Virus record (IMG/VR): IMGVR_UViG_3300041411_000129
Coordinates: 124,001 to 188,000 of that record
Reading direction: 5' to 3' (one strand)
DNA length: 64,000 nucleotides
Every line of letters starts with the position of its first letter. The stretch's first letter is position 1. A program made the position numbers and the translations under genes. Under the pieces are notes generated by a model. That model was not told the DNA's origin. It was given only the letters and a program-made list of their open reading frames with translations, and ran no database searches. This document shows positions 343 through 60,852 of the stretch, piece after piece.

Positions 343-1833
343 ATGGATTTGATTAATTACGATATCTACGAGCCACGTCAGCGTTATCCGGGGCGTAAGG
401 GTATCTATCCAGTCATTGAAGACTTCGACCTGATGTTCAAGAACTTGAGCATTAAGCCGATGTTGGCAAACGACCTGGATCTCGAAACAGATGAAGGTAA
501 ACAGCGGTTCAACGATCTGGTCTACACCAAGTACGATGGTGACGTGTTCTCCAACGTGCCGGCGTGTCCATGCCGTAAGACTTCTGGTGGTAGCCGTATT
601 CATGACAACTGTATTCACTGCGGTTATGAAGTACTGCCAATTACAGAGCAAACTATCGAACCTATCGTCTGGGTAAGGGCACCTGACGAAGTTCCTGGGT
701 TCATCAACTTGACAATCTACCGGTTGCTCAAGGCCCGATTCACCAAGTCCTCATTCAGCGTCTTCGACTACATCCTTGATCCAAAGTACCGCCCTCCTAA
801 GCTTAACAGCAAAGAAGAGCGTCTTATTGAAGCGATCGTACCTACTCGTGGGTTGGTCTACTTCCATAAGCACTTCGATGAGATCATGTCCAAGTTGTGC
901 GCAATCAGGCACTTCGTAACAGCGGCCAAAGCTGCTAGCACGATGCGTTTCATTGATATCCACAAACACCTGATCTTCTGCCGCTACATGCCGTTCCCAT
1001 CCAAGATTGGTTTCATCGTCGAAGATGTGGGCGACCGTACGTACGTCGATCCAAAGATGGCACCCGCACTGGATGCGCTCATCTGTCTTGGCAAAGTAGC
1101 ATCGGCCAAGCGCATTTCTCTGTACGATCTTGAATCCCGGATCGCACGGTCAAGCAATAAGCTCTGCACCTATTACTCGGGTAACGAGCATCTCAAGATC
1201 TTTGACAAGAAAGGAGTATTGCGAAAACTGGTTTACGGTGTATCGCCGCACTTTACGTTCCGTACGGTAATCACCTCGAACCACAAACCTCACGATCACG
1301 AGTCTCTCGAGATTCCATGGGGTTCAGCAGTTCTGACGTTTAAGCTCCACATCGCGAACAAGCTACGGAAGGAGAAGTATACTCCTAACGAAATCTTGAC
1401 GCTGGTCTACGATAACGTTCTTCGGACGCACCACCGCATTGAGAAGATCTTCGACGAGCTGATCGCCGAATCTCCAGGCGGTCGAGGGATGATGGCAGGC
1501 TTTACGCGGTTCCCATCGCTTAAGCGTGGTTCTACGCAAGGCTTCTACATCGATACGATCAAACGCGATCCTACCCAATTGAGTACATCCATCTCTGTAT
1601 TGACGCTGGTAGCACCCAACGCCGACTTCGATGGTGACTACATGTCTGGACAATTGGCACTGGATAACGTGACAGCAAGGGCTTTCGAGCGCCTGAAACC
1701 AAGTACTGGGTTCATGGACCTCAAGAAGGTCTTCGGAGTGAGTAACCACGCAAACATACCTGCGCCGGTTATCTCTACAATCAACGCACGTATTGAGGAA
1801 GGAAACGACCTATCAGTACCCATGGGAGATTGA
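343..1833 (+). CDS. Non-virion RNA polymerase beta' N-terminal subunit (phiKZ gp55-like)
   Basis: Catalytic NADFDGD motif near the C-terminus and an N-terminal Zn-binding CPC...CIHC; follows chimallin. Confidence 0.93.
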   Translation: MDLINYDIYEPRQRYPGRKGIYPVIEDFDLMFKNLSIKPMLANDLDLETDEGKQRFNDLVYTKYDGDVFSNVPACPCRKTSGGSRIHDNCIHCGYEVLPITEQTIEPIVWVRAPDEVPGFINLTIYRLLKARFTKSSFSVFDYILDPKYRPPKLNSKEERLIEAIVPTRGLVYFHKHFDEIMSKLCAIRHFVTAAKAASTMRFIDIHKHLIFCRYMPFPSKIGFIVEDVGDRTYVDPKMAPALDALICLGKVASAKRISLYDLESRIARSSNKLCTYYSGNEHLKIFDKKGVLRKLVYGVSPHFTFRTVITSNHKPHDHESLEIPWGSAVLTFKLHIANKLRKEKYTPNEILTLVYDNVLRTHHRIEKIFDELIAESPGGRGMMAGFTRFPSLKRGSTQGFYIDTIKRDPTQLSTSISVLTLVAPNADFDGDYMSGQLALDNVTARAFERLKPSTGFMDLKKVFGVSNHANIPAPVISTINARIEEGNDLSVPMGD

Positions 1834-48583: not shown

Positions 48584-49771
48584 TTACTCGCCTTTGGAGT
48601 CGTACTGTCGAAGGCTTGCGTTGGCGTGCAGATACGCCGACTGAGCAATACCGCCGACCAACGGCAGCATGGTGCGTGGACCAGTGCCGATGCGGGCCAG
48701 GATCTTGGAAACGATCGCAGGACCTTGCTTAACGCGGGACTTGTCGTAAGTACCGTTAGCGCGCTTCAGATCGCTGATAGCGATCCGCAGATCACGCTTG
48801 GTTTCGTCCATCCACTTAGCAACGTCAGTCAGACCACGAATGATGTCACGGATCTCGCCGAAGCCGCAGACGAAAGTACCTTCAGCGATCTTGGTTTCCG
48901 ATTTGGTAACCTTGATAGCCGCGTTCAGAACGTTGAGGTCGTTATCGCCGGCGGAGACAGTGACTACGTTCAGGCCAGGGAACTCGTAGAACTCGTTCGA
49001 GCCGTTAGGAGTACCTTGTGGCAGATCGGCTTCGCTGACTTCCTGACCGCCTTTCAGCTTGTCAGTAACGGTAGCGCCCAGCTTGGCGTACATCTTGACC
49101 CAATCACCGGCCAGGAGCTTACCAAAGTTGGTAGCAGTATCCAACGCCTGTTTCGGAGTCAGAGTCTTCTGAGTAGTCTGCAAGTAAGCAGCCCACTTAG
49201 GAGCACCATCGAACTTATCTTTCTTCAGAGTGCCAGCAGCCTGGTTCTGACGAGAGATCAAGTTGTCGCGCATTCTGTAAACGGCAGACTCGGTCTTACC
49301 GTAGTTGTTCATCAGACCGGTCAGCATCTCGGCCAGCTTAGCGCAAGCGGCTTTGAAAGCTTCCCACATGCGAGCCAGCAGACCTTTCGACTTACCTTCA
49401 GTTTCCTGACGGTTCTCGAAGCTGGTCTGATGGACGCCGATGGATTCGAACGATGCCGAGAACACCGCATCAGGAACTGGCAGGTCAGCAGCGCGCAGGA
49501 TGTTACCAACGCCCAACTGGTACTGGCGCGCAGTCTTGGCGTTCCAGTTATCGGCCGGTACACGATCCATGAAGTCAGAAACGAACGACTCGAGGGATAC
49601 GGTTACTTCGGCGATGCTTTCAACGTTGCGGCTACCTTCAGCGATTTCGGCATCGCTTACAGCAGCGTCAGATACGCATTCAGCGATCTCGCCAATTACC
49701 ACGTCAGTTGGGTTCTCTTCCAACATCATGGCATCAGCGGCTTGCTGTAGTGGATCGTCGTGTACAATCAT
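48584..49771 (-). CDS. Internal head/ejection protein paralog
   Basis: VSLES, ASFES and TSFE sites, then GLLARMWEAFK; ATG 49771 with GAGG RBS. Confidence 0.8.
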   Translation of the reverse strand: MIVHDDPLQQAADAMMLEENPTDVVIGEIAECVSDAAVSDAEIAEGSRNVESIAEVTVSLESFVSDFMDRVPADNWNAKTARQYQLGVGNILRAADLPVPDAVFSASFESIGVHQTSFENRQETEGKSKGLLARMWEAFKAACAKLAEMLTGLMNNYGKTESAVYRMRDNLISRQNQAAGTLKKDKFDGAPKWAAYLQTTQKTLTPKQALDTATNFGKLLAGDWVKMYAKLGATVTDKLKGGQEVSEADLPQGTPNGSNEFYEFPGLNVVTVSAGDNDLNVLNAAIKVTKSETKIAEGTFVCGFGEIRDIIRGLTDVAKWMDETKRDLRIAISDLKRANGTYDKSRVKQGPAIVSKILARIGTGPRTMLPLVGGIAQSAYLHANASLRQYDSKGE

Positions 49772-49779
49772 GGGAAACC

Positions 49780-51009
49780 TCAGTTGTAAGCGTTGGCACA
49801 CTCGTCGATGTAACGAATGCTTGCCTTGATGGTTTTGAGGAAGTACGGGGTGGCGTTAATCCAACCCTGTGCTGCCAAGCTGCATGCTTTGTTCAGGGAG
49901 CTGAACGCAGTCCGGAGTACTGCTACATCAGTCTTATCGTTGTGGGCGGTAACGCTCTTGGAGAGTTTGCCGACCTTATCGGTAATGGCTGTGAAAGCAT
50001 TCATCTCACGTTTGAGACTAACGAGGACTTTGAGTCCATCATTACAAACGGTGATGCCTGTTTTCAATTCAGCTACAGAAAGCAGATCAGCTTTCGTATT
50101 GTTCGCTACAGCCGACTGGTTGATCTTGATCTTAGTCCCCATGATCGGATTAGCCCCAGCACCCGGAGTCAATTCCAGATAATGGTTAGGGGTAATATCG
50201 ATCTTGACCGGTTTCATCGCCAGCGACTTCTCAGCGAACTCGGTAACACTCTTACCGACTTTATCCGCATCCAGTCCAGCGACGTTAGTCGGTAGAGGGA
50301 ACTCAACCAAACTCTTCCAGCCACCGCGCCATTCGATCGCGAAGTCTTCGAAGTAAGCGACTGCTTGAACGACGTGACGACTAGGCGGTTCGATACGCGA
50401 ATGTTTGTCCGTAAGATAGGCAGCGACCTTACCTACGTTAACATCTTCGACCGTAGCCTTAGCATCAGCCTTGATTAAGGAAACCTTCTCCGTAACCTTA
50501 TCGAGATAGTTCTCGACAGACTTACCGCTGTCAGTCAGATTCTCCCAGAAGGAAACGAACGCATCGGCGACAGCTTTCATCGCTACATGAAGCCACGTCA
50601 GAATACGACGGATGATGCCGTCCTTCTTCTCAGCGACTTCAGTGCTGTAGTTCCCGTTACTCGCTTCGAACGACGGTACAATCATTGTTGCGGGGATGTA
50701 GATATCCGCGTTAACGAGAATGGCTTCAACCGACAGACGTAGAAGATCAGCGTCGCCTTCATCGAATCCATCCGCGCCACAAGCGGCGATACTCTTATCC
50801 ACCAAATCCGTCAGGTTATCGGACACACCAGCCGCAATGGAGATCTCATCGGAATGACCCTCCACTTCAGCCGCAATATGAGACAGCTTCTCGATATTGC
50901 CGTCAGCCAGATCCGAGGCCTCGATAATGGAATCTTCGAGGCTCAGATGAATGACTGGACGTGGTGTCGACGCTGACTGGGCGAGTCTTTGAAGAATACT
51001 AGCAGTCAT
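49780..51009 (-). CDS. Internal head/ejection protein paralog
   Basis: LSLED, PSFE and YSTEVAEKKDGIIRRILTW. Confidence 0.8.
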   Translation of the reverse strand: MTASILQRLAQSASTPRPVIHLSLEDSIIEASDLADGNIEKLSHIAAEVEGHSDEISIAAGVSDNLTDLVDKSIAACGADGFDEGDADLLRLSVEAILVNADIYIPATMIVPSFEASNGNYSTEVAEKKDGIIRRILTWLHVAMKAVADAFVSFWENLTDSGKSVENYLDKVTEKVSLIKADAKATVEDVNVGKVAAYLTDKHSRIEPPSRHVVQAVAYFEDFAIEWRGGWKSLVEFPLPTNVAGLDADKVGKSVTEFAEKSLAMKPVKIDITPNHYLELTPGAGANPIMGTKIKINQSAVANNTKADLLSVAELKTGITVCNDGLKVLVSLKREMNAFTAITDKVGKLSKSVTAHNDKTDVAVLRTAFSSLNKACSLAAQGWINATPYFLKTIKASIRYIDECANAYN

Positions 51010-51022
51010 TGTCTGTCACCGG

Positions 51023-52450
51023 TTACTTGGCGTGATCGTAGGTGTTGCCCTGGTTGTTACCGGCAGCATTTGCACGATAGCGCTCAGGACGAACCACTTC
51101 AGGCTCATCTTCTTTGGTATCGCTACCACCAGCGCCACCTTTGATCTTGCTGGCCGACAGGTCGCAATAGCGCATGTTGGCTTTGAGCATCATCAGGAAG
51201 TCAGGAACCGACTTGGTCCAGCCCTGAGACATTACACGGCAACCGCCGAGGATACCGTTGACCCACAGACGCAGCTCAGGATCGATCTTCGCGCCACCCA
51301 TGCTTTCAGCCATCTTCAGACGACCGAGGATGGTATTGCAAGCCTTGACCACTGCGTCAGCGCCTTTGGTCCAGCTGGAAACGTCTTTCTCGATGACCTT
51401 CATGATGTCGAGGGCCTTCAGAGCCAGCGTGCAACCGCTCAGCATTTCAGCGTGCTTCAAGACCTTACCGGTGTGAGCAGCCTTCTCTTTGATGACGGCA
51501 CGTTCCAGTTCGACCTTGGCGCCGTTGAGAGGCCACTTGCTATCTTCGCCAGGGATCAGCTTGATAGTGCTGGTCTCGGAGATCTTGATGTCCTTCAGCT
51601 TGGACATGTCGTTCTTCATCGAACGGTTCAGGTTATCGACCGCCGTATTGAGGAACGTGGTGATCGGACCGACGTCGTTCATGCTCGAAGGCGGCTTGAT
51701 GTCCACCAGATCTTCGAACGCGCCGTGCCAGGCCGAAACGAAGTTCTTGAACAGACCCACGTTGGTCTGAACGATCGCAGCAGGTGGCTTGACCACGCCG
51801 GAAGCGTTCGCGCAATACGCGCCAATGCTCGCACCGAGATTGATGGTGCCTTCTTCGGTCTCGCCTTTGTTCTTGTTGATCTTCGCCAATACAGCGGTGC
51901 CGTATTTGCCGATCGACTTGCTGTTGTTGAACAGACGGTGCCAGAACTTGGCAACCATAGCCATCAGGCTCTTGAACGCTTCAGCTACCCAGCTAAGGAT
52001 ACGGCCGATAACGCCCTTCTTCTTTTCTTCAGCTTCCGTTGAGTAGTCCGAACGGCTAGCGCAGGATTCGAAAGAAGGAACCACGACACCTACTGGAATG
52101 CCCAGGCCGGAGACCTTCAGAACGGCTTCCACCGAGATGAACATCAGTGCAGCACCTTCTTCGGTGATACCGCTGGCGCCGTAGGTTTCGATAGTCTGGT
52201 CGACGATCGCTTCGATAGAGCCGGCTGCTGCCTCAGCTTTATCGATGGAGGCATTCTGCCCATTGATGTCTTCGGAGATAGCATTGATCTCGGCAATGTC
52301 GGCAACGATATCTTGCGACAGTTGTTCGAGTTCTTCACCCTGTACCGGCTCTTCTTCAGGAGCTGGGAGGTTAGCGAAGTCTGGCTGAGCTGGCAGCTCA
52401 GACGATTCAACGCCGTAGTTAGCAAGTTGCTGCAAGATGGATGGAGGCAT
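51023..52450 (-). CDS. Internal head/ejection protein paralog
   Basis: PSFES and YSTEAEEKKKGVIGRILSW; ATG 52450 with AAGGA RBS. Confidence 0.8.
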   Translation of the reverse strand: MPPSILQQLANYGVESSELPAQPDFANLPAPEEEPVQGEELEQLSQDIVADIAEINAISEDINGQNASIDKAEAAAGSIEAIVDQTIETYGASGITEEGAALMFISVEAVLKVSGLGIPVGVVVPSFESCASRSDYSTEAEEKKKGVIGRILSWVAEAFKSLMAMVAKFWHRLFNNSKSIGKYGTAVLAKINKNKGETEEGTINLGASIGAYCANASGVVKPPAAIVQTNVGLFKNFVSAWHGAFEDLVDIKPPSSMNDVGPITTFLNTAVDNLNRSMKNDMSKLKDIKISETSTIKLIPGEDSKWPLNGAKVELERAVIKEKAAHTGKVLKHAEMLSGCTLALKALDIMKVIEKDVSSWTKGADAVVKACNTILGRLKMAESMGGAKIDPELRLWVNGILGGCRVMSQGWTKSVPDFLMMLKANMRYCDLSASKIKGGAGGSDTKEDEPEVVRPERYRANAAGNNQGNTYDHAK

Positions 52451-52487
52451 GGCTATGTCCTTGGTAATGACGTACGTGAAACGATGA

Positions 52488-53864
52488 TTAAGCGGCTTTG
52501 GAATAGGCCGAGGCGCTGGCGCTGACATAACCGTCAAGTGCAGACTTAACTGCCCAGATAGTTTTGATCAGCTTAGGGGGAAGCATCCCGAGATCGTACA
52601 TAACGTCGACGGCCAGCTTGTAGGCGTCACACGCTTCTTTGATCGCAGTGGTATCTTCGTTGGCTGCCTTCTTCTTGCTGTACAGAGCGTTCAGTTGAGA
52701 GCTCATGTCAAACAGTTTGGTAGCCATGCCGTCGATCTCTTCAGCAGCATCCTGAAGAGGTTTGATGAAATCGCCAACATGGTCAGTCCATGCGGGAACT
52801 GCATCGGTGTAGTCTTGCATATCCTGAGCGCTGAGCGCTGGATACTCACCACCCTCGGCTTCCTTGTGAACCACCATGTTGCTATTGAGGTTCATGGAGT
52901 TGCCTTTACGCTCGCCAGTCAGAACGATGTCGATGTTCTTACTCACGTTGAACTCGACTTCTTTCGCTTGACCGAGTCCGACAGCATTGAGGAGAGCGGT
53001 CAGCACCCGAGGGAGTTCACTTTCCTTCGTCGGCTGTACGCCATTGACGATCGAGCTGACTTTCTTAACCATTTCCAGAACGCGGTCAGCTGAGTGCTTG
53101 CCGAAACCTTTGAGATCCTTGAGAGTCTCAGTAGGCTTCTTAGCCCGACCATCTTGCCCGATGATGAACTTAGGGTCCTTAACAGTAACCTTAGTGCTTG
53201 GAGTAGACGGAGCTGCTTTAGGAGCCGCTTTCGGTTCTTCCTTCTTCGGTTCTGGTTCGGGCTTCTTCGGTGGAGGAGATGTCGGTTTCTCAGCAGGCTT
53301 AGCCGCTGGCTTGACCTCAGACTCTTCCTCCTTCTCAGCCGGCTTCTCTTCAGCAGGCGCGTCGCCGTCAACGGCTGCATCAACCTTCTTCTTCAGAGCT
53401 TCGTTCTTGGCCTGGTCGTTCTTCTTGAACAGACCCAGCTTCTGGAAGAACGCCTTCAGCATTCCCATGAGGGTAGTGAAGGTACGCTTGATCCATGCCC
53501 AGATCTTACCAATGAAGCCCTCGCTCTTCTCCTCAGCTTCCGTTGAGTAGTTCTCAGGAACGCTGGATTCGAAGGACGGAGCAAGCATCGTAACTGGGAG
53601 ATCCAGATCAGACGCCATCAGAACCGACTCCATACAAACACGATAAAGCGCAGCGCGCTCTACGTCCATGGATGGCTTGTCGTTAATGAAGGCGTCACGA
53701 ATGTTCTTCACCGAAGCGAGGGTCGCACGAGCTCGAACAATCTGGGTTTGAAGCACATCCATCTCGTGGAAATCGGATTGCATGTCCACGCTTTCGAAGC
53801 TATAAGCAGCTTCTACTCGCCCGATGTTGTTGTTGGCTAGCTGTTTCAAAATGCTCGCGGTCAT
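52488..53864 (-). CDS. Internal head/ejection protein paralog with a Pro/Glu/Lys linker
   Basis: YSFES, PSFES and YSTEAEEKSEGFIGKIWAW. Confidence 0.8.
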   Translation of the reverse strand: MTASILKQLANNNIGRVEAAYSFESVDMQSDFHEMDVLQTQIVRARATLASVKNIRDAFINDKPSMDVERAALYRVCMESVLMASDLDLPVTMLAPSFESSVPENYSTEAEEKSEGFIGKIWAWIKRTFTTLMGMLKAFFQKLGLFKKNDQAKNEALKKKVDAAVDGDAPAEEKPAEKEEESEVKPAAKPAEKPTSPPPKKPEPEPKKEEPKAAPKAAPSTPSTKVTVKDPKFIIGQDGRAKKPTETLKDLKGFGKHSADRVLEMVKKVSSIVNGVQPTKESELPRVLTALLNAVGLGQAKEVEFNVSKNIDIVLTGERKGNSMNLNSNMVVHKEAEGGEYPALSAQDMQDYTDAVPAWTDHVGDFIKPLQDAAEEIDGMATKLFDMSSQLNALYSKKKAANEDTTAIKEACDAYKLAVDVMYDLGMLPPKLIKTIWAVKSALDGYVSASASAYSKAA

Positions 53865-53956
53865 TTTACACACTCGACTAGAGTATTATGCAAAGATCGA
53901 GAAGACCTCGCTCGGCGGATTATTACTTACATAAGATCTCCCTAAAGGAACGATTA

Positions 53957-54304
53957 ATGAAGATTGGATCGGTCCAAGATGTTGAGTTCGAAACCACTCA
54001 ACACGGCAATGTAATCCCTGTTCTGAAGATACAATCTGGAAGAACTAAGTTCGATTACAAACTCCCCAACATTCATGTACTTCAAGAGATGAAGTTGTGG
54101 ATGGCAGACATCGTGATGTTCACTGAGAAAGCCGGTAAGACTTCCTGCAAGGTATTAATGGAGAACCGTCCCATTGATGCTAGTCCTGTCGAACTACCAC
54201 ACACCTGCCAATCGTGTGGAGAAGAACTCCACATCTATCTAGAACGGCGACTGATCGTCAAGTGCGTTAATCAGTCTGGATGTAAGGCTCAGAATGTAGG
54301 ATGA
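53957..54304 (+). CDS. Standalone OB-fold plus C4 zinc-finger module resembling NAD-dependent DNA ligase (LigA) domains, without an adenylation domain
   Basis: VQDVEFETTQHGNVIPVL, LPNIHVLQEMKLWMADIV...KAG and PHTCQSCGEEL...KCVNQSGCKAQ align by eye to the LigA OB and Zn-finger; AAGGA RBS before ATG 53957. Confidence 0.7.
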   Translation: MKIGSVQDVEFETTQHGNVIPVLKIQSGRTKFDYKLPNIHVLQEMKLWMADIVMFTEKAGKTSCKVLMENRPIDASPVELPHTCQSCGEELHIYLERRLIVKCVNQSGCKAQNVG

Positions 54305-54308
54305 CGCT

Positions 54309-54761
54309 ATGCTACTGGATGTCAAAGGCGACATGTTCAAACGCGCCCCAAAGGGATCGTTAGTCGGCATTCCCGTTAATACCGTCGGAGTAGGCGGGAA
54401 GGGTCTGGCGTGTCTAATGAAGCTGCGTTGGCCAGAGGCGTACAAGAAGTATTGCAAAGATTGTAGACGCGGTAGGATCGCATCAGGAGAGCTCTGCGTG
54501 TATGACGTAGGGGACTATCGTCTCGCTATGCTACCAACTAAGTACTACTGGGGTAATCCTTCCGATAAAGGCCTGATCACAATCACGGCTAAAAGACTCC
54601 TTGCCTACATGGAAGGTACGTTCGAGGAAGATTGCTACATCCCTCAACTCGGATGTGGTGATAAGACTGGAACGTTGGATTATGAAGTTGATGTTCGCCC
54701 TATCCTCGAAGAAGTGTTTGGCGAGGCTGGCGAAACCATTCACGTATTCGATTGGAGCTGA
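54309..54761 (+). CDS. Macrodomain ADP-ribosylhydrolase, DarG-like
   Basis: GDMF, PVNTVGVGGKGLA, LPTKYYW and IPQLGCG motifs. Confidence 0.88.
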   Translation: MLLDVKGDMFKRAPKGSLVGIPVNTVGVGGKGLACLMKLRWPEAYKKYCKDCRRGRIASGELCVYDVGDYRLAMLPTKYYWGNPSDKGLITITAKRLLAYMEGTFEEDCYIPQLGCGDKTGTLDYEVDVRPILEEVFGEAGETIHVFDWS

Positions 54762-54764
54762 CAG

Positions 54765-55019
54765 ATGTTCAAAGAGCTGGATGCGAAGATACAGCAAGAT
54801 CTGGTTGCGTTAGGCAAAGAGATCTGGGCTGAGTTTAATATCGATGTACCTGCGCCTGTTGAGGTGTATATCTCACGAGTTGATCAATACCTCAGTCGCC
54901 TACACACTCGGACTCCTCCTGAATTCGAGGTAACTGTAGATGCGGATGGTACATTCACCGTTTATACCCCAGTGAGTAAACCCGTATGTCCTCTAACGAT
55001 AGTAGCAACCCGCCGGTAA
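54765..55019 (+). CDS. Small hypothetical protein
   Basis: 84 aa with GGAG RBS. Confidence 0.7.
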   Translation: MFKELDAKIQQDLVALGKEIWAEFNIDVPAPVEVYISRVDQYLSRLHTRTPPEFEVTVDADGTFTVYTPVSKPVCPLTIVATRR

Positions 55020-55024
55020 GAACC

Positions 55025-55390
55025 ATGGCTTTCGAGAGCGCTCAGATCGAACGCATCGAAGCGTGGTTGATCGGTGAAGGCTGGACTGTTAATCGCTTCG
55101 ATTATAGCCTGACACCTTCCTGTGCTGAAGTGAACTACCGCGCCAAGACATTCCGTTCGAACATCAGCAGCGCCTATTACTGTGCGCAAGTGTTTGAGCG
55201 CGTTGAGAACAACCTCAAGACAAAAGGAGTAACAACCGTTGGAGGATACATGTACGTCTTCAGTGGAGGAGAAACCCACCGTCGGCATGATGGCGGGGAT
55301 TTGTATCAACATAAAGCGCTATCTATCCACCCGGTGGAGTTACCGCGTGCGAAGCCTAAGGCTATTGATGAGCTGATATACCCGGCGTAA
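55025..55390 (+). CDS. Hypothetical protein
   Basis: ATG 55025 follows the upstream stop; ends at a hairpin. Confidence 0.7.
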   Translation: MAFESAQIERIEAWLIGEGWTVNRFDYSLTPSCAEVNYRAKTFRSNISSAYYCAQVFERVENNLKTKGVTTVGGYMYVFSGGETHRRHDGGDLYQHKALSIHPVELPRAKPKAIDELIYPA

Positions 55391-55393
55391 GCG

Positions 55394-55428
55394 GCATACA
55401 TCGCCCGGCCTTGAGCCGGGCTTTATGC
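55394..55428 (+). terminator. Hairpin with CATA/TTTATGC flanks
   Basis: GCCCGGC-CTTGA-GCCGGGC-TTTATGC. Confidence 0.7.
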
Positions 55429-55448
55429 TGCAATCGTAGTCAAAGAAT

Positions 55449-55465
55449 TTACAGTCACACATTGC
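55449..55465 (+). promoter_or_regulatory. Putative early promoter motif variant (TTACAGTCACACATTGC)
   Basis: Nearly identical to the 57859-57876 copy. Confidence 0.55.
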
Positions 55466-55508
55466 CGGAGTACATAAACCAACTGATCAACGAAACTGGA
55501 GATCAATC

Positions 55509-55604
55509 ATGGCAAACTTTGCCCGTGCTGTAGCCGTCGGTGTAACCGTCGTCGTAGTATCGCAAATCATCCTTCGCCAGCTTTCCAAGCGCGGCTACAT
55601 CTAA
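55509..55604 (+). CDS. 31-aa single-TM microprotein (not in the ORF track)
   Basis: GGAG RBS; MANFARAVAVGVTVVVVSQIILRQLSKRGYI. Confidence 0.7.
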   Translation: MANFARAVAVGVTVVVVSQIILRQLSKRGYI

Positions 55605-55635
55605 CCCCAATTCTAACGACCGAGGAGGTCTAATC

Positions 55636-55755
55636 ATGAAACAGAAACCACGCGAAATCCGAATCTACTTCCGCGGTCAAGTCGCCCTCGATATTCGAGA
55701 CAGACTCATCTTGGCGCAAATCACCACCCCGGTAAAGACTAAGGATTCGAAATGA
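55636..55755 (+). CDS. 39-aa basic microprotein (not in the ORF track)
   Basis: GAGGAGG RBS; MKQKPREIRIYFRGQVALDIRDRLILAQITTPVKTKDSK; ATGA overlap with the next ORF. Confidence 0.7.
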   Translation: MKQKPREIRIYFRGQVALDIRDRLILAQITTPVKTKDSK

Positions 55756-55880
55756 AACAGTTTAAACTCGTACTGGCTGGCATGATTCTGAGCATTGGCA
55801 TTTCGACTGCTTACTCTTCAGGTATCTTCGATGAAGCTGGTCAGTACAAGGCGCAACACGCAGCATTCGCAGCGCAGTAA
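55752..55880 (+). CDS. 42-aa signal-peptide/membrane microprotein (not in the ORF track)
   Basis: MKQFKLVLAGMILSIGISTAYSSGIFDEAGQYKAQHAAFAAQ; AAGGA RBS. Confidence 0.65.
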   Translation: MKQFKLVLAGMILSIGISTAYSSGIFDEAGQYKAQHAAFAAQ

Positions 55881-55906
55881 TTTATTGCAATCTAAAAAGA
55901 TTGACT

Positions 55907-55916
55907 GACACATTAC
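55907..55916 (+). promoter_or_regulatory. Putative early promoter motif (GACACATTAC)
   Basis: Intergenic ACATTAC copy. Confidence 0.55.
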
Positions 55917-55968
55917 TAACGTAGTCATGCGCTGACTTTTGATACCCACTGTCCGTGGAGGACGCCCC

Positions 55969-56295
55969 ATGAATTTCCAAACCGTAGCAGACATCATAAT
56001 CTGCTTACTCTTCATCTACTTCGCGACCGTTAGAACCCGCGTGGTCTGGAAGCATTTGAAGGATCGTAACGCCGTCACAGTTGCCCGCATCTACGGCTGC
56101 TGTTGTGTTGCGATTGGTTGGAACGGAACGATCTCTCGATACGTTAAAGTAACTCTACCGATACTCGGTGTGATGCTCTACGGATCATGGACTTTCCAGT
56201 TGATCGGTACTCTCAGCTTCTTAGCTGTTGAGCAAGCGATCGCACTTGTTGTAGCCGTTTCAATTTATCTCGCTGCACGTTTCGTAACACGCTGA
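55969..56295 (+). CDS. Multi-TM membrane protein
   Basis: GGAGG RBS; 3-4 hydrophobic segments in 108 aa. Confidence 0.75.
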   Translation: MNFQTVADIIICLLFIYFATVRTRVVWKHLKDRNAVTVARIYGCCCVAIGWNGTISRYVKVTLPILGVMLYGSWTFQLIGTLSFLAVEQAIALVVAVSIYLAARFVTR

Positions 56296-56349
56296 ACCCA
56301 AACCCTAACGTAACACCCTTTGTAATTAACGTCCGTGGAGGACAAACAA

Positions 56350-56703
56350 ATGCTCGATATCATCTTCACTATCCCTGTAGCAATCGTGTTCATGCTCATC
56401 ACTCTGATGGCTGGTTACGTCATTGGCAAACTGAAAGAAGACGAACGCTGGGAAGAAGTCGCTATGGCTTTCTGCACTATGGGTGACTGGGGTCTCAAGA
56501 CTCACTTCACTCGCCGTCTGATGCTTTTGCTGAACATCGTCATCTCCATCATCTGGATCTACTACATCGACACTCCAGTCTTCGTAGCGTTCTGCATGAC
56601 TATCATCGTAGCTTCCCACATCGCAGCCTACATCCTGAACACTCGTTGCGGTATTCCATACCCAGACAAAGATGCAGTGAAAGTGATGTTCCTTAAGAAG
56701 TAA
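56350..56703 (+). CDS. Multi-TM membrane protein
   Basis: GGAGG RBS; 3 hydrophobic segments. Confidence 0.75.
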   Translation: MLDIIFTIPVAIVFMLITLMAGYVIGKLKEDERWEEVAMAFCTMGDWGLKTHFTRRLMLLLNIVISIIWIYYIDTPVFVAFCMTIIVASHIAAYILNTRCGIPYPDKDAVKVMFLKK

Positions 56704-56713
56704 GTAACGATAT

Positions 56714-56756
56714 GTGAGGGTGGCCCAGCCACCCTCATTGTTAATCTTTTTTTTTT
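56714..56756 (+). terminator. Intrinsic terminator
   Basis: TGAGGGTGG-CCCAG-CCACCCTCA, then a T-rich tract ending in T10. Confidence 0.75.
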
Positions 56757-56770
56757 GGTCGAGGTGTGGG

Positions 56771-57817
56771 ATGCCTAGTAAAAGCAAGAAGCAATATGAT
56801 CTCATGAAGATCGCTTCGTATAACAAAGAGTTTGCCGAGAAACGCCACATCGATCAGGATGCTGCGCGTGAATGGCATAAGGCTGATAAGGAGATGGAGA
56901 AGAAGGATAAAGACTTCTACAAGAACCTCCCCGATCATGCTGAAGATAAGAAAAAGAAGAAGCCTGCTAAGAAGCGTACCAGTCAGCGCCGTAAGCGCGA
57001 GAAGGGTGAAGCTCATGAGAAGGCTGGCGATGCTTCGATGGAAGGTGTCGTATCGTCTATCTTGGATCTCTTTCGATCCAGCCAGACTATCGATGACATT
57101 CCAGACGCTGTTAGTGATAGCGTCATCCAAAAGCTTTCCGCCGATCCAAATGCATTGGCCGGGATGGAACTGCGCACTGGTCCTGTCGATGTACGTGGGG
57201 TCAATACTCACTTCCTGCTGAAGACCTGGTCGAACAACTGGCTATCGGATGTTGAGGCTCACGCCAAGGCAATCGATGCGTTCTACAAGAAGTTCATTCC
57301 TGCGCGTGCTGCGTACGGTAATGCGCTGAAGAAGATCTACGATCAGTGCGAGAAGATGTCTCCTAGTGAAGCGCTGGCTTACGCCAAGCCTCGCGTCAAC
57401 ATGGAGAAGATCAAACTCGGTCGTATGGACCTCCCTGACCTGAAGAACTTCGCGGTTGATTTCAAACGCGATGGTCATGGCTACAAGCTTACCCTCGGTA
57501 CTCCGGGTAAAGGTCCTGATTCGATGGAAGCCCTCAGCGAAGGCGCTATCCGTAAAGTCGTATCCATCCTCGGCATTCTCCTTCGCGGTTACGACTACGA
57601 AGATGAAGACGACTACGGTTGGTATCTTGACGATACGGACGAAGCCAAGTTCTGGATGCGTAACTTCCCGGATGAAGATGAAATCACCGGTGAGTTGCTC
57701 AGCCTGTTCCCGTGCGCTGGCGACTGGTACGAGTTTGCTTATGATGACGTTCTCGACATGGCGATCGAGAAGATGTACCTTGGTCTGAAAGGCCTGGTCA
57801 TGAAGTCCATCAAGTAA
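56771..57817 (+). CDS. Putative virion protein with a basic N-terminal propeptide
   Basis: [12 protein letters not shown]...KEFAEK N-domain, Lys-rich linker, then an ASMEG S-x-E processing-type site; GAGG RBS. Confidence 0.7.
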
Positions 57818-57848
57818 CATAAGGCCCGGCTTCGGCCGGGCTCTATGC
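57818..57848 (+). terminator. Hairpin with CATA/TATGC flanks
   Basis: CATAAGGCCCGGC-TTCG-GCCGGGCTCTATG. Confidence 0.75.
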
Positions 57849-57858
57849 CGTCAACTAA

Positions 57859-57876
57859 TTTACGGTCACACATTAC
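57859..57876 (+). promoter_or_regulatory. Putative early promoter motif (TTTACGGTCACACATTAC)
   Basis: Intergenic, about 40 nt upstream of the AmrZ-like gene. Confidence 0.6.
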
Positions 57877-57917
57877 CCACTCGTCACTTAACCATTAATC
57901 AAGATCGGAGTTACCGC

Positions 57918-58310
57918 ATGAAACCTTTGAAACAAGCAATCTATTCTTCGCGTTCGGCTGATAAGTTCGTAGTTCGTCTTCCAGACGGCATGCGTGAAAA
58001 GATCGCTGATGTTGCTCGTGGTCACCACCGCAGCATGAACTCTGAAATCATCGCACGACTCGAAGCGTCGTTGATGGCTGAAGGGCACATTGATGTGGAA
58101 GAGGGTGAACTGGAAGCATTGCCACCTGAAGGTTGGATGCCGGGTATTGGTCAATTTGTTTATAAGAAAGCCGGTGGTAAGAAAATCTACGGAACCATCA
58201 AAGCAATTTATATCAACGAGCTGGGTGAGATGTCAGCCAAGGTCACTAACGATCTACTGGGCAACTTCACCGAAATGCTGAAGCTCTTACGTCCTGTCAT
58301 CCTGAAGTAA
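57918..58310 (+). CDS. amrZ: AmrZ/AlgZ-like Arc-family ribbon-helix-helix regulator with a replaced C-terminal domain
   Basis: [52 protein letters not shown] closely matches the Pseudomonas AmrZ N-terminal DNA-binding domain; GGAG RBS. Confidence 0.9.
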
Positions 58311-59199: not shown

Positions 59200-59208
59200 G
59201 AGTTGTAC

Positions 59209-60852
59209 ATGTTTCTGAATGAAGTGGATCAAATCCAACACAACCTCTACTCCAAGCTCATGGAACAGGGTTATCTGAAAGGCGACCGGACAGGTGTAGG
59301 CACCCTCATGCTGCCGGGTCTGGTAATGAACTACGATATCAGCGATAAACGTATCCCGCTGCCGTCGACCAAAGAAGTCTTCAACAAGTCGTGGGGCATC
59401 GAGAACCTGATGTTCATCTCGGGTTCCAGCAACATCAAGTTCCTGAAAGACAACAACGTGTCGATCTGGGATAACTGGTTCATGCCAGGCACTGCGGTTT
59501 ACGACGAACCGAAGCGCGTTCCTTACACTCTGGATGAACGCATTCAAGTCGCTGTGGACACGGGTCATCGTCAGGCGATCCTCGATCACGTTACTGCGTT
59601 CAAGCTCAATTCGAAAAGCATCGGCAGTGGCTGCATCGTTGTTCAAGACGAGAACGGCGATCTGGTGGAGTTCTTCAATCTTACTTTCACGTATTACGGT
59701 GAGCTGATTGGATATCTCGATGGTCTCGGAATTCCAACCCATAATGAAAATGGTGGTGGTAAGCCGGTCGGCATTCAGACTCGTCTGAAACGTGTTGCGA
59801 AGAATCAGTCTGCTTGCTGGGAAGCTATCAACGCTATCGTCTTCAACTTCGGTGATGAAGTCGCCGCAGGCGATAAGCCGTACAAGGTCGTTGTCTTCCA
59901 TAACGGCAAGTTTGTTGACGTCGAGATCAGTCAGAAGAAAGTCGCAGCTATTCAGGCTGTGATGGATACCTTTGATATTCCGAAGTATCCTCTGTTGGAA
60001 GCTGATATCGGTCAGGGTAGCTACGGCGTTCAGTGGCGGCGGTGGCAGGATACGCAGATTGTTGACTGCATGTATGACGACGCTACATTCAAGCAGTACG
60101 AAGCTCAGGGCTACACGTTCAAGGGTAATCTGGATTACGGCCCGGATGAAGATCGCATGAAGTGTGTCTTCCATCGCGATATCGACCAGTTGCAGAACTG
60201 CATCGATATGTTGCGCAAGAACCCTGACGATCGCCGCATGATCGTTAACGCATGGAACCCAGGTCGTACATGGCAAGCTGCTTTGCCTCCGTGCCATCTG
60301 TACTTCCAGTTCATCAGCTATCCGAAGACTGCCGGTCAGATCCTCGACGATCTCGAGAAAGCGGGCATGCTGCAAAGCCTGCGTCAAGCGATCTCCGAAG
60401 ATTACGGCACTCACGTAATCGAAACTGTTCAAAGCTTCGAGAAGAAGTACGAAGAAGATGAAGAGTTCTACGGTTACGTGAAGCGTTTCTGTGAGCATGC
60501 GGTAGTAGGCGTTAATCCACGCCTCATATCCACGCTGATGGTAATGCGCTCCAACGACTACGCTCTGGGCATGCCGTTCAACGTAGCGCAGTATGCGGCC
60601 TTGACGCACATGGTTGCACACGTCACCGGCCACGATACTGACCGTCTGATCGTTGTAGGTGGTGATTGCCACCTGTACGTGAATCAGCTGGAAGGTATCA
60701 GCAAACAGTTGGCGCGTACTTCTACGGAAGAGAGTGATCCTCGGTTCATTATCAAACGTAAGATCGCCGAGATTGATGACTTCACTTTCGAAGACTTCAA
60801 AATCGAAGGCTATCTGCCGCAGCCAAACATCCCAATGCCTGTCGCGGTGTAA
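59209..60852 (+). CDS. thyA: Thymidylate synthase with large insertions
   Basis: DRTGVGT, TKEV, IWDNW, YGVQWRRW, DRRMIVNAWNP, ALPPCH (catalytic Cys), RSND..LGMPFN and DCHLY. Confidence 0.95.
   Translation: MFLNEVDQIQHNLYSKLMEQGYLKGDRTGVGTLMLPGLVMNYDISDKRIPLPSTKEVFNKSWGIENLMFISGSSNIKFLKDNNVSIWDNWFMPGTAVYDEPKRVPYTLDERIQVAVDTGHRQAILDHVTAFKLNSKSIGSGCIVVQDENGDLVEFFNLTFTYYGELIGYLDGLGIPTHNENGGGKPVGIQTRLKRVAKNQSACWEAINAIVFNFGDEVAAGDKPYKVVVFHNGKFVDVEISQKKVAAIQAVMDTFDIPKYPLLEADIGQGSYGVQWRRWQDTQIVDCMYDDATFKQYEAQGYTFKGNLDYGPDEDRMKCVFHRDIDQLQNCIDMLRKNPDDRRMIVNAWNPGRTWQAALPPCHLYFQFISYPKTAGQILDDLEKAGMLQSLRQAISEDYGTHVIETVQSFEKKYEEDEEFYGYVKRFCEHAVVGVNPRLISTLMVMRSNDYALGMPFNVAQYAALTHMVAHVTGHDTDRLIVVGGDCHLYVNQLEGISKQLARTSTEESDPRFIIKRKIAEIDDFTFEDFKIEGYLPQPNIPMPVAV

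What the first reader, a model, noticed from the sequence alone, without database searches (positions are those of the whole stretch)
53957..58310. Accessory host-takeover/anti-defence island next to the structural module
Seen: within 4.4 kb lie the LigA fragment, the macrodomain, two hypotheticals, five small membrane or basic proteins, a propeptide-bearing virion-type protein and the AmrZ chimera. Three of the six ACATTAC-type motifs fall here, and units are separated by family hairpins. Inference: a modular early-expressed island targeting host regulation, envelope and defence; the unknown ORFs are good candidates for new anti-defence proteins.
Basis: inference. Interest (0 to 1): 0.6.

Follow-up and report, generated by a model that had tools for sequence, protein, structure and literature searches.

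The report
Mixed early/late counter-defence gene block, jumbo phage
In an uncultured nucleus-forming jumbo phage that probably infects Pseudomonas, this 4.4-kb stretch is a conserved row of five short transcription units, not one mobile island; it holds a known type of anti-DarT DNA-repair enzyme that here always comes with a DNA-ligase-derived DNA-binding partner, a pairing I did not find described in the papers I read.

Summary
Three of the window's six ACATTAC-type motifs lie in the region, and GC-rich hairpins bound most units.

The window is part of a 254-kb chimallin-encoding phiKZ-like phage. The motif is very probably its early (virion RNA polymerase) promoter: there are 31 sites, all on the + strand, including those ahead of the chimallin and non-virion RNA polymerase genes. 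In the region it drives three units:
- three micro-ORFs;
- two membrane proteins;
- an AmrZ mimic.

The first operon (ligase-like gene, macrodomain, two ORFans) and the 348-aa propeptide-bearing protein lack the motif. They carry conserved TATG late-type signals instead.

The gene order of internal-head-protein cluster, OB/Zn gene, macrodomain, 31-aa ORF, 348-aa protein, AmrZ-like gene and thymidylate synthase persists in relatives down to about 30% identity. Only hyp84, hyp134, s39 and TM108 are specific to this lineage.

The macrodomain is a homologue of AdfM/DarG (anti-DarT, described 2026). The AmrZ-like gene belongs to the known class of mobile AmrZ homologues.

The new point is the "LigA fragment". 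It is a conserved LigA-type OB-fold plus zinc-finger protein. It sits directly upstream of the macrodomain in every relative that has it, and is fused to it in at least three lineages.

The parts
48584..53873 (-). Context: four paralogous phiKZ_IP (internal head protein) genes, transcribed away from the region
   Evidence: PF12699 matches at G000 173034-177765. The same cluster precedes the block in relatives.
53874..53956 (.). Divergent intergenic region with conserved TATG on each strand (+ at 53887, - at 53933). No early-type motif.
   Evidence: TATG is the phiKZ late promoter (PMC12809450). Assigning it here is inference.
53957..54304 (+). OB/Zn protein (115 aa): LigA-type OB fold plus four-cysteine zinc finger, with no adenylation domain
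   Evidence: AF2 pLDDT 94. Foldseek to E. coli LigA 2owo: TM 0.79, E 3e-7. Four Cys invariant in 17 sequences. dN/dS 0.22.
54309..54761 (+). AdfM/DarG-like macrodomain (150 aa), start 4 nt after the OB/Zn stop
   Evidence: DarG NCBIfam 2.5e-20, PADLOC 1.1e-20. PDB 5m31 2.7e-14. phiKZ gp104 38% identity, E 1e-21.
54765..55019 (+). hyp84, lineage-specific ORF of unknown function
   Evidence: No family hits. Present only in L009 and L014. dN/dS 0.14.
54986..55390 (+). hyp134, lineage-specific ORF (possible alternative start at 55025)
   Evidence: Only two close homologues among 5.8 billion proteins. The Atlas holds the form starting at residue 14. dN/dS 0.09.
55403..55427 (+). Family hairpin (GCCCGGC stem) followed by TTTATG; probable terminator of the first operon
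   Evidence: About a dozen copies of this stem occur genome-wide.
55438..55469 (+). Early-promoter-like motif (core at 55458), 51 nt before s31
   Evidence: PWM score 36.8. The 94-nt hairpin-plus-motif cassette recurs at G000 88593-88691, 82% identical.
55509..55604 (+). s31: conserved 31-aa single-pass membrane micro-protein
   Evidence: Exactly 31 aa in seven phages, 35-97% identical. An early motif lies upstream in the six of them where the upstream sequence scored.
55636..55755 (+). s39: basic 39-aa ORF, absent from the closest relatives
   Evidence: 110-nt gap in L009. No homologue in any locus.
55752..55880 (+). s42: 42-aa ORF with a hydrophobic N-terminus, conserved in the clade
   Evidence: Family F4, present in L016, L018, L019 and L022.
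55889..55920 (+). Early-promoter-like motif (core at 55909), 60 nt before TM108
   Evidence: PWM score 25.3. Conserved in L009, weaker in L014.
55969..56295 (+). TM108: membrane protein, lineage-specific
56350..56703 (+). TM117: membrane protein with about three TM segments
   Evidence: Homologue in L022 only. Positional analogues elsewhere.
56708..56756 (+). Conserved GATATGT, then a 10-bp-stem hairpin, then ten T, directly ahead of the 348-aa gene
   Evidence: The GATATGT-hairpin-T-run arrangement is kept in window, L009, L014, L016, L017, L018 and L019, although the stems differ.
56771..57817 (+). p348: probable head-internal protein with a cleavable N-terminal propeptide. Monocistronic, no early motif.
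   Evidence: 15 homologues. Conserved N-terminus, lysine-rich disordered linker and an S-M-E-G site at residues 91-94. Foldseek hits only chimallivirus proteins, several of them annotated 'virion structural protein'. A prohead protease Peptidase_S80 is in the genome.
57824..57847 (+). Family hairpin followed by CTATG
57849..57880 (+). Early-promoter-like motif (core at 57869), 49 nt before the AmrZ-like gene
   Evidence: PWM score 31.5. A motif at the same place in all seven relatives.
57918..58310 (+). AmrZ-like ribbon-helix-helix protein with a clade-specific C-terminal domain
   Evidence: Pfam Arc 1.4e-22. AmrZ 3qoq 6.7e-23. C-terminal domain conserved within the clade but not shared with Noxifer.

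Best explanation
The stretch is a clade-conserved slot between the internal-head-protein (phiKZ_IP) cluster and the nucleotide-metabolism genes. The phage is nucleus-forming and phiKZ-like, with a probable Pseudomonas host. The slot holds five short + strand transcription units of mixed timing.

Unit A (53957-55390) has no early motif and carries a TATG late-type signal. It encodes a LigA-derived OB-fold/zinc-finger DNA-binding protein, translationally coupled to an AdfM/DarG-like macrodomain, followed by two ORFans. I propose that the macrodomain removes DarT-type ADP-ribose from phage DNA. I further propose that the OB/Zn protein brings or holds it on DNA: in trans here, in cis where the two are fused.

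Units B and C (from 55458 and 55909) have early promoters. They make small membrane proteins, including a conserved 31-aa one, whose targets are unknown.

Unit D (56771-57817) is a late, monocistronic head-internal protein. Its N-terminal propeptide would be removed by the prohead protease.

Unit E (from 57869) has an early promoter. It makes an AmrZ mimic that would occupy AmrZ-type operators on host DNA.

Shown here: homologies, folds, synteny, gene fusions, purifying selection and motif distribution. Inferred: expression timing, DNA de-ADP-ribosylation, cooperation between OB/Zn and the macrodomain, propeptide cleavage, and the AmrZ-type targets.
For: Phage type:
- Chimallin, two non-virion RNA polymerase subunit homologues (phiKZ gp71-73 and gp74) and a further RNA polymerase beta-like gene next to chimallin are present.

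Early motif:
- 31 sites, all on the + strand, 43-70 nt before start codons, against 0-4 in shuffles.
- Sites lie ahead of chimallin and its neighbouring RNA polymerase beta-like gene, and ahead of the gp71-73/gp74 homologues.
- Jumbo-phage early promoters are exactly such findable conserved motifs (PMC7598289).
- In seven relatives the motif lies ahead of the AmrZ-like gene, and in six ahead of s31. It never lies ahead of the macrodomain operon or p348.

Macrodomain:
- It matches DarG models, TaqDarG 5m31 and phiKZ AdfM.
- The VNTVG asparagine and the PTK lysine are kept.
- AdfM function and its late expression are published.

OB/Zn protein:
- High-confidence LigA OB+Zn fold.
- Directly upstream of the macrodomain in window, L009, L014, L022, L019, L018, L023, L024, L025 and L026.
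- Fused to the macrodomain in L020, P0024 and P0048.
- L019 keeps it alongside a full-length LigA.

p348.

AmrZ mimic.
Against:
- TATG is short and also occurs inside genes of the region.
- The complex prediction for OB/Zn with the macrodomain gave no verdict.
- phiKZ AdfM works without such a partner, and phiKZ gp103 is not OB/Zn. The partner may therefore do something else.
- p348 does not match Pfam phiKZ_IP, and its structural matches are weak (TM 0.3-0.43).
- In chimallivirus infection host DNA is degraded early (PMC13309987), which limits what a host-directed repressor could achieve.
Confidence: 0.62

Rival explanations
1. One reading: one modular, early-expressed accessory island, gained as a unit, whose unknown ORFs are mostly new anti-defence proteins.
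For: Three early-type promoters lie in 4.35 kb. Two known counter-defence or host-regulation families are present. Some ORFs are lineage-specific. One terminator-promoter cassette is duplicated elsewhere in the genome.
Against: The backbone is syntenic down to about 30% protein identity. Two of the five units lack the early motif in all relatives. GC content is close to the rest of the window and there are no mobility genes. p348 looks structural.
Confidence: 0.15
2. The ligase-like ORF is a decaying remnant of a lost phage LigA, and its position next to the macrodomain is accidental.
For: The genome has no full-length LigA. A relative has one a few kb downstream. The ORF scores weakly against LigA profiles.
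Against: dN/dS is 0.22 and the frame is intact. The four zinc-binding cysteines are invariant across 17 diverged sequences. The fold is confident. The gene is adjacent to the macrodomain in at least 10 loci and fused to it in three lineages. It coexists with a full LigA in L019.
Confidence: 0.03
3. The macrodomain pair does not act on DarT-modified DNA. The macrodomain might clear soluble ADP-ribose derivatives or protein ADP-ribosylation. The OB/Zn protein might act separately, for example by capping nicks or competing with host LigA.
For: PHROG 335 is labelled 'phosphatase'. A survey argues that phage macrodomains mainly target soluble ADP-ribose signals (PMC9503650). Relatives place a DprA/SLOG-like gene in the same operon.
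Against: The best matches are DarG-specific models and the tested AdfM. Fusion to a DNA-binding module argues for a DNA substrate.
Confidence: 0.18
4. The ACATTAC-type motif is not the early promoter. It could be a middle-class promoter or an operator for a phage regulator such as the AmrZ-like protein.
For: No transcription start was mapped. The motif is long (about 25 nt) and less AT-rich than the phiKZ early consensus described in PMC7598289.
Against: Its position is fixed 43-70 nt ahead of start codons and it occurs on one strand only. It lies ahead of chimallin and non-virion RNA polymerase genes, which must be transcribed before that polymerase exists. It is conserved in position across relatives.
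Confidence: 0.12

Closest known systems
AdfM (phiKZ gp104), chimallivirus DarG2-like macrodomain, anti-DarT factor (Morgan et al., Cell Rep 2026, PMC13309987)
   Same: A single macrodomain of about 150 aa in a chimallin-encoding jumbo phage. 38% identical to gp104. The catalytic Asn and Lys motifs are kept. In both phages it lies near head-protein genes (gp99 'structural head protein' in the phiKZ record; the phiKZ_IP cluster here).
   Different: Here it always follows, or is fused to, a LigA-type OB/Zn gene. phiKZ gp103 is unrelated, and the paper mentions no ligase-like partner. Activity, nuclear import and timing are untested here.
DarG antitoxin of DarTG toxin-antitoxin defence systems
   Same: The macrodomain matches positions 5-147 of the DarG models and the TaqDarG and MtbDarG structures.
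   Different: It lacks the C-terminal DarT-binding half of DarG (150 aa against about 330). No DarT gene is adjacent.
NAD-dependent DNA ligase LigA, domains 3 (OB fold) and zinc finger
   Same: The fold superposes on E. coli LigA bound to nicked DNA (TM 0.79). The four cysteines are conserved.
   Different: No Ia, adenylation, HhH or BRCT domains, so it cannot ligate. One relative (L018, P0023) keeps an HhH-like extension.
Mobile AmrZ homologues of Pseudomonas phages and plasmids (PaBG, phi3, JBD68; Borges et al., bioRxiv 10.1101/673095) and Gp53 of phage PhiPA1019 (PMC13650114)
   Same: The ribbon-helix-helix domain aligns closely with AmrZ and the DNA-contacting strand ADKFVVRLP is identical. 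DNA-level matches to the PaBG and phi3 genes. Predicted to be early, as reported for Gp53.
   Different: The C-terminal 70 residues are a clade-specific domain, not the AmrZ tetramerisation tail. Targets are untested.
phiKZ-type internal head proteins with protease-removed propeptides (phiKZ_IP; SPN3US and 201phi2-1 head proteins)
   Same: Lies next to the IP cluster. Has a conserved N-terminal domain, a disordered linker and an S-x-E site. Prohead protease S80 is present. Structural matches are only to chimallivirus proteins, several annotated as virion proteins.
   Different: No Pfam PF12699 match. It lies on the opposite strand from the IP genes, embedded between early units.
phiKZ early (virion RNA polymerase) and late (TATG) promoters
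   Same: One strongly conserved motif ahead of early operons, and TATG signals elsewhere.
   Different: The motif sequence differs (consensus roughly AAA-N4-ATTACAGTCAYACATTRY). No start sites were mapped.

Membership tests
AdfM / DarG-type DNA ADP-ribosyl glycohydrolase macrodomain | Sequence membership in the DarG macrodomain clade | tested here: met
   NCBIfam DarG 2.5e-20 (below the full-length cut-off because only the N-terminal half is present). PADLOC DarG 1.1e-20. PDB 5m31 2.7e-14. phiKZ gp104 E 1e-21.
AdfM / DarG-type DNA ADP-ribosyl glycohydrolase macrodomain | Catalytic asparagine (phiKZ N23) and lysine of the PTK motif conserved | tested here: met
   VNTVG and PTKYYW align with VNVVG/PTKDNW of gp104 and VNTVG/PTKKHW of TaqDarG. 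That these are the catalytic residues comes from PMC13309987 for the asparagine and from my own knowledge for the lysine.
AdfM / DarG-type DNA ADP-ribosyl glycohydrolase macrodomain | Encoded by a nucleus-forming chimallivirus | tested here: met
   Chimallin (phrog_4795) and split RNA polymerase genes are in the same genome.
AdfM / DarG-type DNA ADP-ribosyl glycohydrolase macrodomain | Removes DarT2 ADP-ribose from DNA, rescues DarT toxicity, is imported into the phage nucleus | not testable with these tools
   Needs biochemistry and microscopy.
NAD-dependent DNA ligase (LigA) | Adenylation (nucleotidyltransferase) domain | tested here: not met
   Only profile positions 307-430 are matched. 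The ORF has 115 aa. No other LigA segment occurs in the genome.
NAD-dependent DNA ligase (LigA) | OB fold plus C4 zinc finger | tested here: met
   AF2 pLDDT 94. Foldseek 2owo TM 0.79. Four invariant Cys.
Jumbo-phage early (virion RNA polymerase) promoter | Conserved motif repeated ahead of operons that must be expressed before the non-virion polymerase exists | tested here: met
   31 sites, including ahead of chimallin and its neighbouring RNA polymerase beta-like gene and ahead of the gp71-73/gp74-like genes.
Jumbo-phage early (virion RNA polymerase) promoter | Transcripts start about 10 nt downstream, early, and independently of protein synthesis | not testable with these tools
   No RNA data.
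Mobile AmrZ homologues | AmrZ-type ribbon-helix-helix domain with conserved DNA-contacting strand | tested here: met
   3qoq alignment E 6.7e-23. ADKFVVRLP identical.
Mobile AmrZ homologues | AmrZ C-terminal tetramerisation region | tested here: not met
   Residues 60-130 do not align with AmrZ or with the Noxifer homologue. They are conserved only within the clade.
phiKZ-type propeptide-bearing head-internal protein | Pfam phiKZ_IP signature | tested here: not met
   No PF12699 match at G000 180771-181817.
phiKZ-type propeptide-bearing head-internal protein | N-terminal propeptide ending at an S/A/G-x-E site, with the cognate prohead protease in the genome | tested here: inconclusive
   A-S-M-E at residues 91-94 is conserved in most of the 15 homologues, after a disordered lysine-rich linker. 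Peptidase_S80 is present. Cleavage itself is untested.
Accessory genomic island | Variable presence among relatives, atypical composition, or mobility genes | tested here: not met
   The backbone is conserved. GC is 0.47-0.51 against 0.47-0.58 across the window. No integrase or transposase. Only 4 of 11 ORFs are lineage-specific.

The most novel reading that the evidence does not exclude
The LigA-derived OB/zinc-finger protein is a dedicated DNA-targeting subunit of a two-part (sometimes fused) anti-DarT enzyme. It would recognise nicked, gapped or stalled-fork DNA and deliver the macrodomain to ADP-ribosylated bases. This would be a lesion-directed counter-defence complex, built by a phage from a piece of its own replication ligase.
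Probability: 0.35. Interest if true: 0.6.

Novelty: new variant of a known kind. Interest (0 to 1): 0.5.

Why it matters
AdfM showed that the phage nucleus alone does not protect chimallivirus DNA from DarT. A whole uncultured clade couples, or fuses, that macrodomain to a ligase-type DNA clamp. This suggests that substrate targeting matters for counter-defence, and it gives a simple pair of proteins to test.

The block also offers three further leads:
- a predicted early promoter consensus for this clade;
- a strictly conserved 31-aa early membrane micro-protein;
- four small ORFans in defined early or late contexts, a much shorter candidate list than 'all unknown ORFs'.

Tried and rejected
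Searches that found nothing:
- Megablast of the region against 50,697 phage records: no match. The 'distant' mode matched only the AmrZ-like gene.
- tblastn of p348 against phages: no match. tblastn of OB/Zn: one weak hit to a full-length Staphylococcus phage ligase.
- Pfam, PHROGs, NCBIfam and PADLOC gave nothing for hyp84, hyp134, TM108, hyp105 or hyp149. TM117 had only a sub-threshold Mem_trans hit.
- Protein Atlas found nothing for hyp134 or for the C-terminal domain of the AmrZ-like protein.
- The word-based search gave hyp134 only two close homologues.
- Foldseek of p348 against PDB: nothing with E at or below 0.001.

Jobs that gave no usable answer:
- Complex prediction for macrodomain plus OB/Zn: 'no answer' (score 0.01). 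This is not evidence either way.

Ideas tested and dropped:
- phiKZ gp103 as a possible OB/Zn counterpart: rejected by hhalign (probability 0.6%).
- The closest cultured phage, pPa_SNUABM_DT01 (40% identity in an RNA polymerase subunit), shares only thymidylate synthase in the 29 kb around its TS gene (L011); its macrodomain is of another type (Macro_2, next to a YpsA SLOG gene).
- TATG as a stand-alone late-promoter predictor is too frequent inside genes of the region to assign starts. Only the conserved intergenic copies were used.

Full report
**What the window is**

The window is G000:C1:124001-188000 of a 253,921-bp IMG/VR virus record with direct terminal repeats. The genome encodes:
- a chimallin-type nuclear shell protein, followed by an RNA polymerase beta-like gene;
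- homologues of the phiKZ non-virion RNA polymerase subunits gp71-73 and gp74;
- a phiKZ-type major head protein;
- a Peptidase_S80 prohead protease;
- six phiKZ_IP matches.

It is therefore a nucleus-forming phiKZ-like jumbo phage. It is far from cultured ones: the best match is pPa_SNUABM_DT01, at 40% identity in an RNA polymerase subunit, and there is no near DNA match. Two things point to a Pseudomonas-type host. The AmrZ-like gene aligns closely with P. aeruginosa AmrZ, and it matches Pseudomonas phage genes at 75-82% DNA identity. The host assignment is an inference.

**The observation**

The + strand of the window holds six [CT]ACATT[AG][CT] sites in promoter-like contexts, and three of them (55458, 55909, 57869) lie in the region. 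Family hairpins with a GCCCGGC stem lie at 55403 and 57824. A different hairpin followed by ten T lies at 56715. There is no hairpin between the second and third units. Against a relative about 85% identical in DNA (L009), all ORFs but s39 are intact, with dN/dS 0.06-0.27.

**The motif is probably the early promoter**

A position-weight matrix grown from the exact copies finds 31 sites in the genome. All are on the + strand and nearly all are intergenic, 43-70 nt before a start codon. Shuffled genomes give 0-4. The consensus is roughly AAA-N4-ATTACAGTCAYACATTRY.

Sites lie ahead of chimallin and its neighbouring RNA polymerase beta-like gene (a tandem pair at G000 121933 and 121995). Another lies ahead of the gp71-73/gp74 homologues (window 13035). 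Jumbo phages of this type do not use host RNA polymerase, so genes for the non-virion enzyme must be read by the injected virion enzyme. A review also states that early promoters of such phages are exactly the motif that can be found bioinformatically (PMC7598289). The assignment is an inference from position, not a mapped start.

**Comparison with relatives**

The 348-aa protein has graded homologues at 90, 81, 67, 43, 38 ... 28% identity. I read the loci of seven of them, plus one found through the OB/Zn protein.

All show the same frame. The phiKZ_IP paralogues lie on the minus strand. Then, on the plus strand, come a variable set that includes the macrodomain, a 42-47-aa ORF, a 31-aa ORF, a small membrane protein, the 348-aa protein, the AmrZ-like protein, and further on thymidylate kinase and thymidylate synthase. 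L020 lacks the micro-ORFs and the AmrZ-like gene, L022 has only a 111-aa piece of p348, and L017 is cut before the macrodomain.

The early motif sits ahead of the 31-aa ORF and ahead of the AmrZ-like gene in the relatives. It never sits ahead of the macrodomain operon or the 348-aa gene. Unique to the window's own lineage are hyp84, hyp134, s39 and TM108. So this is a conserved slot with variable cassettes, not an island. GC content is unremarkable.

**Signals at the units without the early motif**

A GATATGT element directly before a hairpin and T-run precedes the 348-aa gene in seven phages, even though the hairpin stems differ. TATG elements are conserved on both strands of the divergent intergenic region. 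TATGC follows the family hairpins.

Genome-wide:
- TATG is at 0.57 of its Markov expectation;
- it is 2.8 times denser in regions upstream of genes;
- it follows 49 of 476 hairpins, against about 3.4 expected.

TATG is the phiKZ late promoter, read by the non-virion polymerase (PMC12809450), and AdfM is stated to be late in phiKZ. I therefore rate units A and D as late or middle. This remains inference, because TATG also occurs inside genes here.

**The macrodomain**

It matches DarG models at about 1e-20, the TaqDarG and MtbDarG macrodomain structures, and phiKZ gp104 at 38% identity. gp104 is AdfM. It removes DarT2 ADP-ribose from DNA, rescues DarT2 toxicity, is imported into the phage nucleus, and is needed by phiKZ on DarTG2-carrying strains (PMC13309987). 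The Asn of VNTVG and the Lys of PTK are kept. This is a new member of a known family.

**The 'LigA fragment'**

It matches only the OB and zinc-finger part of LigA, and the genome has no other ligase piece. It is not a remnant, for the following reasons:
- It is under purifying selection.
- Homologues lie directly upstream of the macrodomain in L022, L019 and L018.
- A profile search over 1.84 billion representatives finds about ten further stand-alone clusters of 108-133 aa, one OB-Zn-HhH form, and OB/Zn-macrodomain fusions (P0024, P0048).
- L020 carries another fusion.
- Four more stand-alone representatives that I looked up are each followed within 1-9 nt by a macrodomain gene. Two of them are visibly next to phiKZ_IP genes.
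- L019 has this gene and a full-length LigA as well.
- The four zinc cysteines are invariant in 17 sequences.
- The AF2 model (pLDDT 94) superposes on E. coli LigA bound to nicked DNA, with TM 0.79.

Gene fusion plus conserved adjacency is standard evidence for a shared function. I propose that the module tethers the macrodomain to DNA. A complex prediction gave no verdict. The AdfM paper does not mention ligase or OB-fold. The passages I retrieved from a survey of viral NAD/ADP-ribose systems describe solo Nlig-Ia domains and SLOG-macro fusions, and the term 'OB-fold' does not occur in that paper. I could not check all the literature.

**The 348-aa protein**

It has:
- a conserved helical N-terminal domain (residues 1-58), which matches N-termini of PHROG 'virion structural protein' families;
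- a disordered lysine-rich linker;
- a conserved S-M-E-G site, which fits the S/A/G-x-E rule of the phiKZ-type prohead protease as I know it;
- a well-folded body.

Foldseek finds no PDB match. It does find a series of chimallivirus proteins, several annotated as virion structural, at E 1e-5 to 1e-2 and TM 0.3-0.43. It is most likely a packaged head-internal protein made late. It may still act first in the next cell if it is ejected with the DNA.

**The AmrZ-like protein**

Residues 1-58 align closely with AmrZ, including the DNA-contacting strand. The C-terminal 70 residues form a domain conserved only in this clade. Phage AmrZ homologues, including those of PaBG and phi3 that match this gene at the DNA level, complement an amrZ deletion, and these two also repress type I-F CRISPR-Cas expression (bioRxiv 10.1101/673095). 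An early AmrZ-like protein of another Pseudomonas phage represses ftsZ, fleQ, pslA and amrZ (PMC13650114). The gene here has an early-type promoter in all relatives. This is a known kind, in a new domain combination.

**Small proteins**

s31 is exactly 31 aa, has a single TM segment, and is conserved in seven phages. s42 is also conserved. The two larger membrane proteins are only positional analogues of those in relatives. Their function is open. Possible targets for early membrane proteins in a phage that starts infection inside a lipid vesicle include that vesicle, the inner membrane, or exclusion of other phages. This is speculation.

**Verdict**

Most named components belong to known kinds. 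The OB/Zn-macrodomain pairing is the part worth following up.

Noticed in passing
whole genome G000; examples at window 55424, 56711, 57844: TATG is at 0.57 of its Markov expectation genome-wide. It is 2.8 times denser upstream of genes and follows 49 of 476 GC-rich hairpins (about 3.4 expected). Many hairpins are palindromic, of the form CATAAAG...CTTTATG. This suggests a terminator-plus-late-promoter module usable in both directions.
   Followed up: partly
window 55386-55479 and G000:C1:88593-88691 (L002): A 94-nt cassette of family hairpin plus early-type promoter is repeated at 82% identity elsewhere in the genome. Shorter copies lie at five more places. Promoter cassettes seem to be duplicated or exchanged.
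   Followed up: partly
G000:C1:121933 and 121995 (about 2 kb before the window start): Two tandem early-type motifs precede the chimallin gene (G000 122244-124262), which is followed by an RNA polymerase beta-like gene (window 343-1833).
   Followed up: partly
L019:13579-15852; L016, L017, L018, L019 downstream of the AmrZ-like gene: Several relatives carry thymidylate kinase between the AmrZ-like gene and thymidylate synthase, and L019 also has a full-length 757-aa NAD-dependent ligase there. In this genome no LigA-family match other than the OB/Zn gene was found, and hyp105 and hyp149, both fast-evolving (dN/dS 0.34-0.40), occupy that space. Thymidylate kinase elsewhere in the genome was not searched.
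   Followed up: partly
L016:6850-7461, L018:6504-7100, L019:5236-5823, L022:7406-8023: A 195-205-aa gene with a weak DprA/DNA_processg_A (Rossmann/SLOG-like) match opens the macrodomain operon in four relatives. It is missing from the window. The cultured phage DT01 has a Macro_2 gene next to a YpsA SLOG gene.
   Followed up: partly
window 55636-55755: The basic 39-aa ORF s39 lies on a 110-nt segment absent from the two closest relatives, and it has no homologue anywhere searched. It may not be a gene.
   Followed up: partly
L022:11020-11355: In one relative the 348-aa protein is represented only by a 111-aa ORF, so even this backbone gene can be lost or truncated.
   Followed up: no
window 54986-55025: hyp84 and hyp134 overlap by 34 nt if hyp134 starts at 54986. 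A public record starts it at residue 14 (55025), just after the hyp84 stop.
   Followed up: no
window 59203-60852: The thymidylate synthase is about 547 aa, roughly twice the usual length. The whole length aligns with the TS region of phiKZ-like phages (PHIKZ235 and its neighbour) at 28% identity.
   Followed up: no
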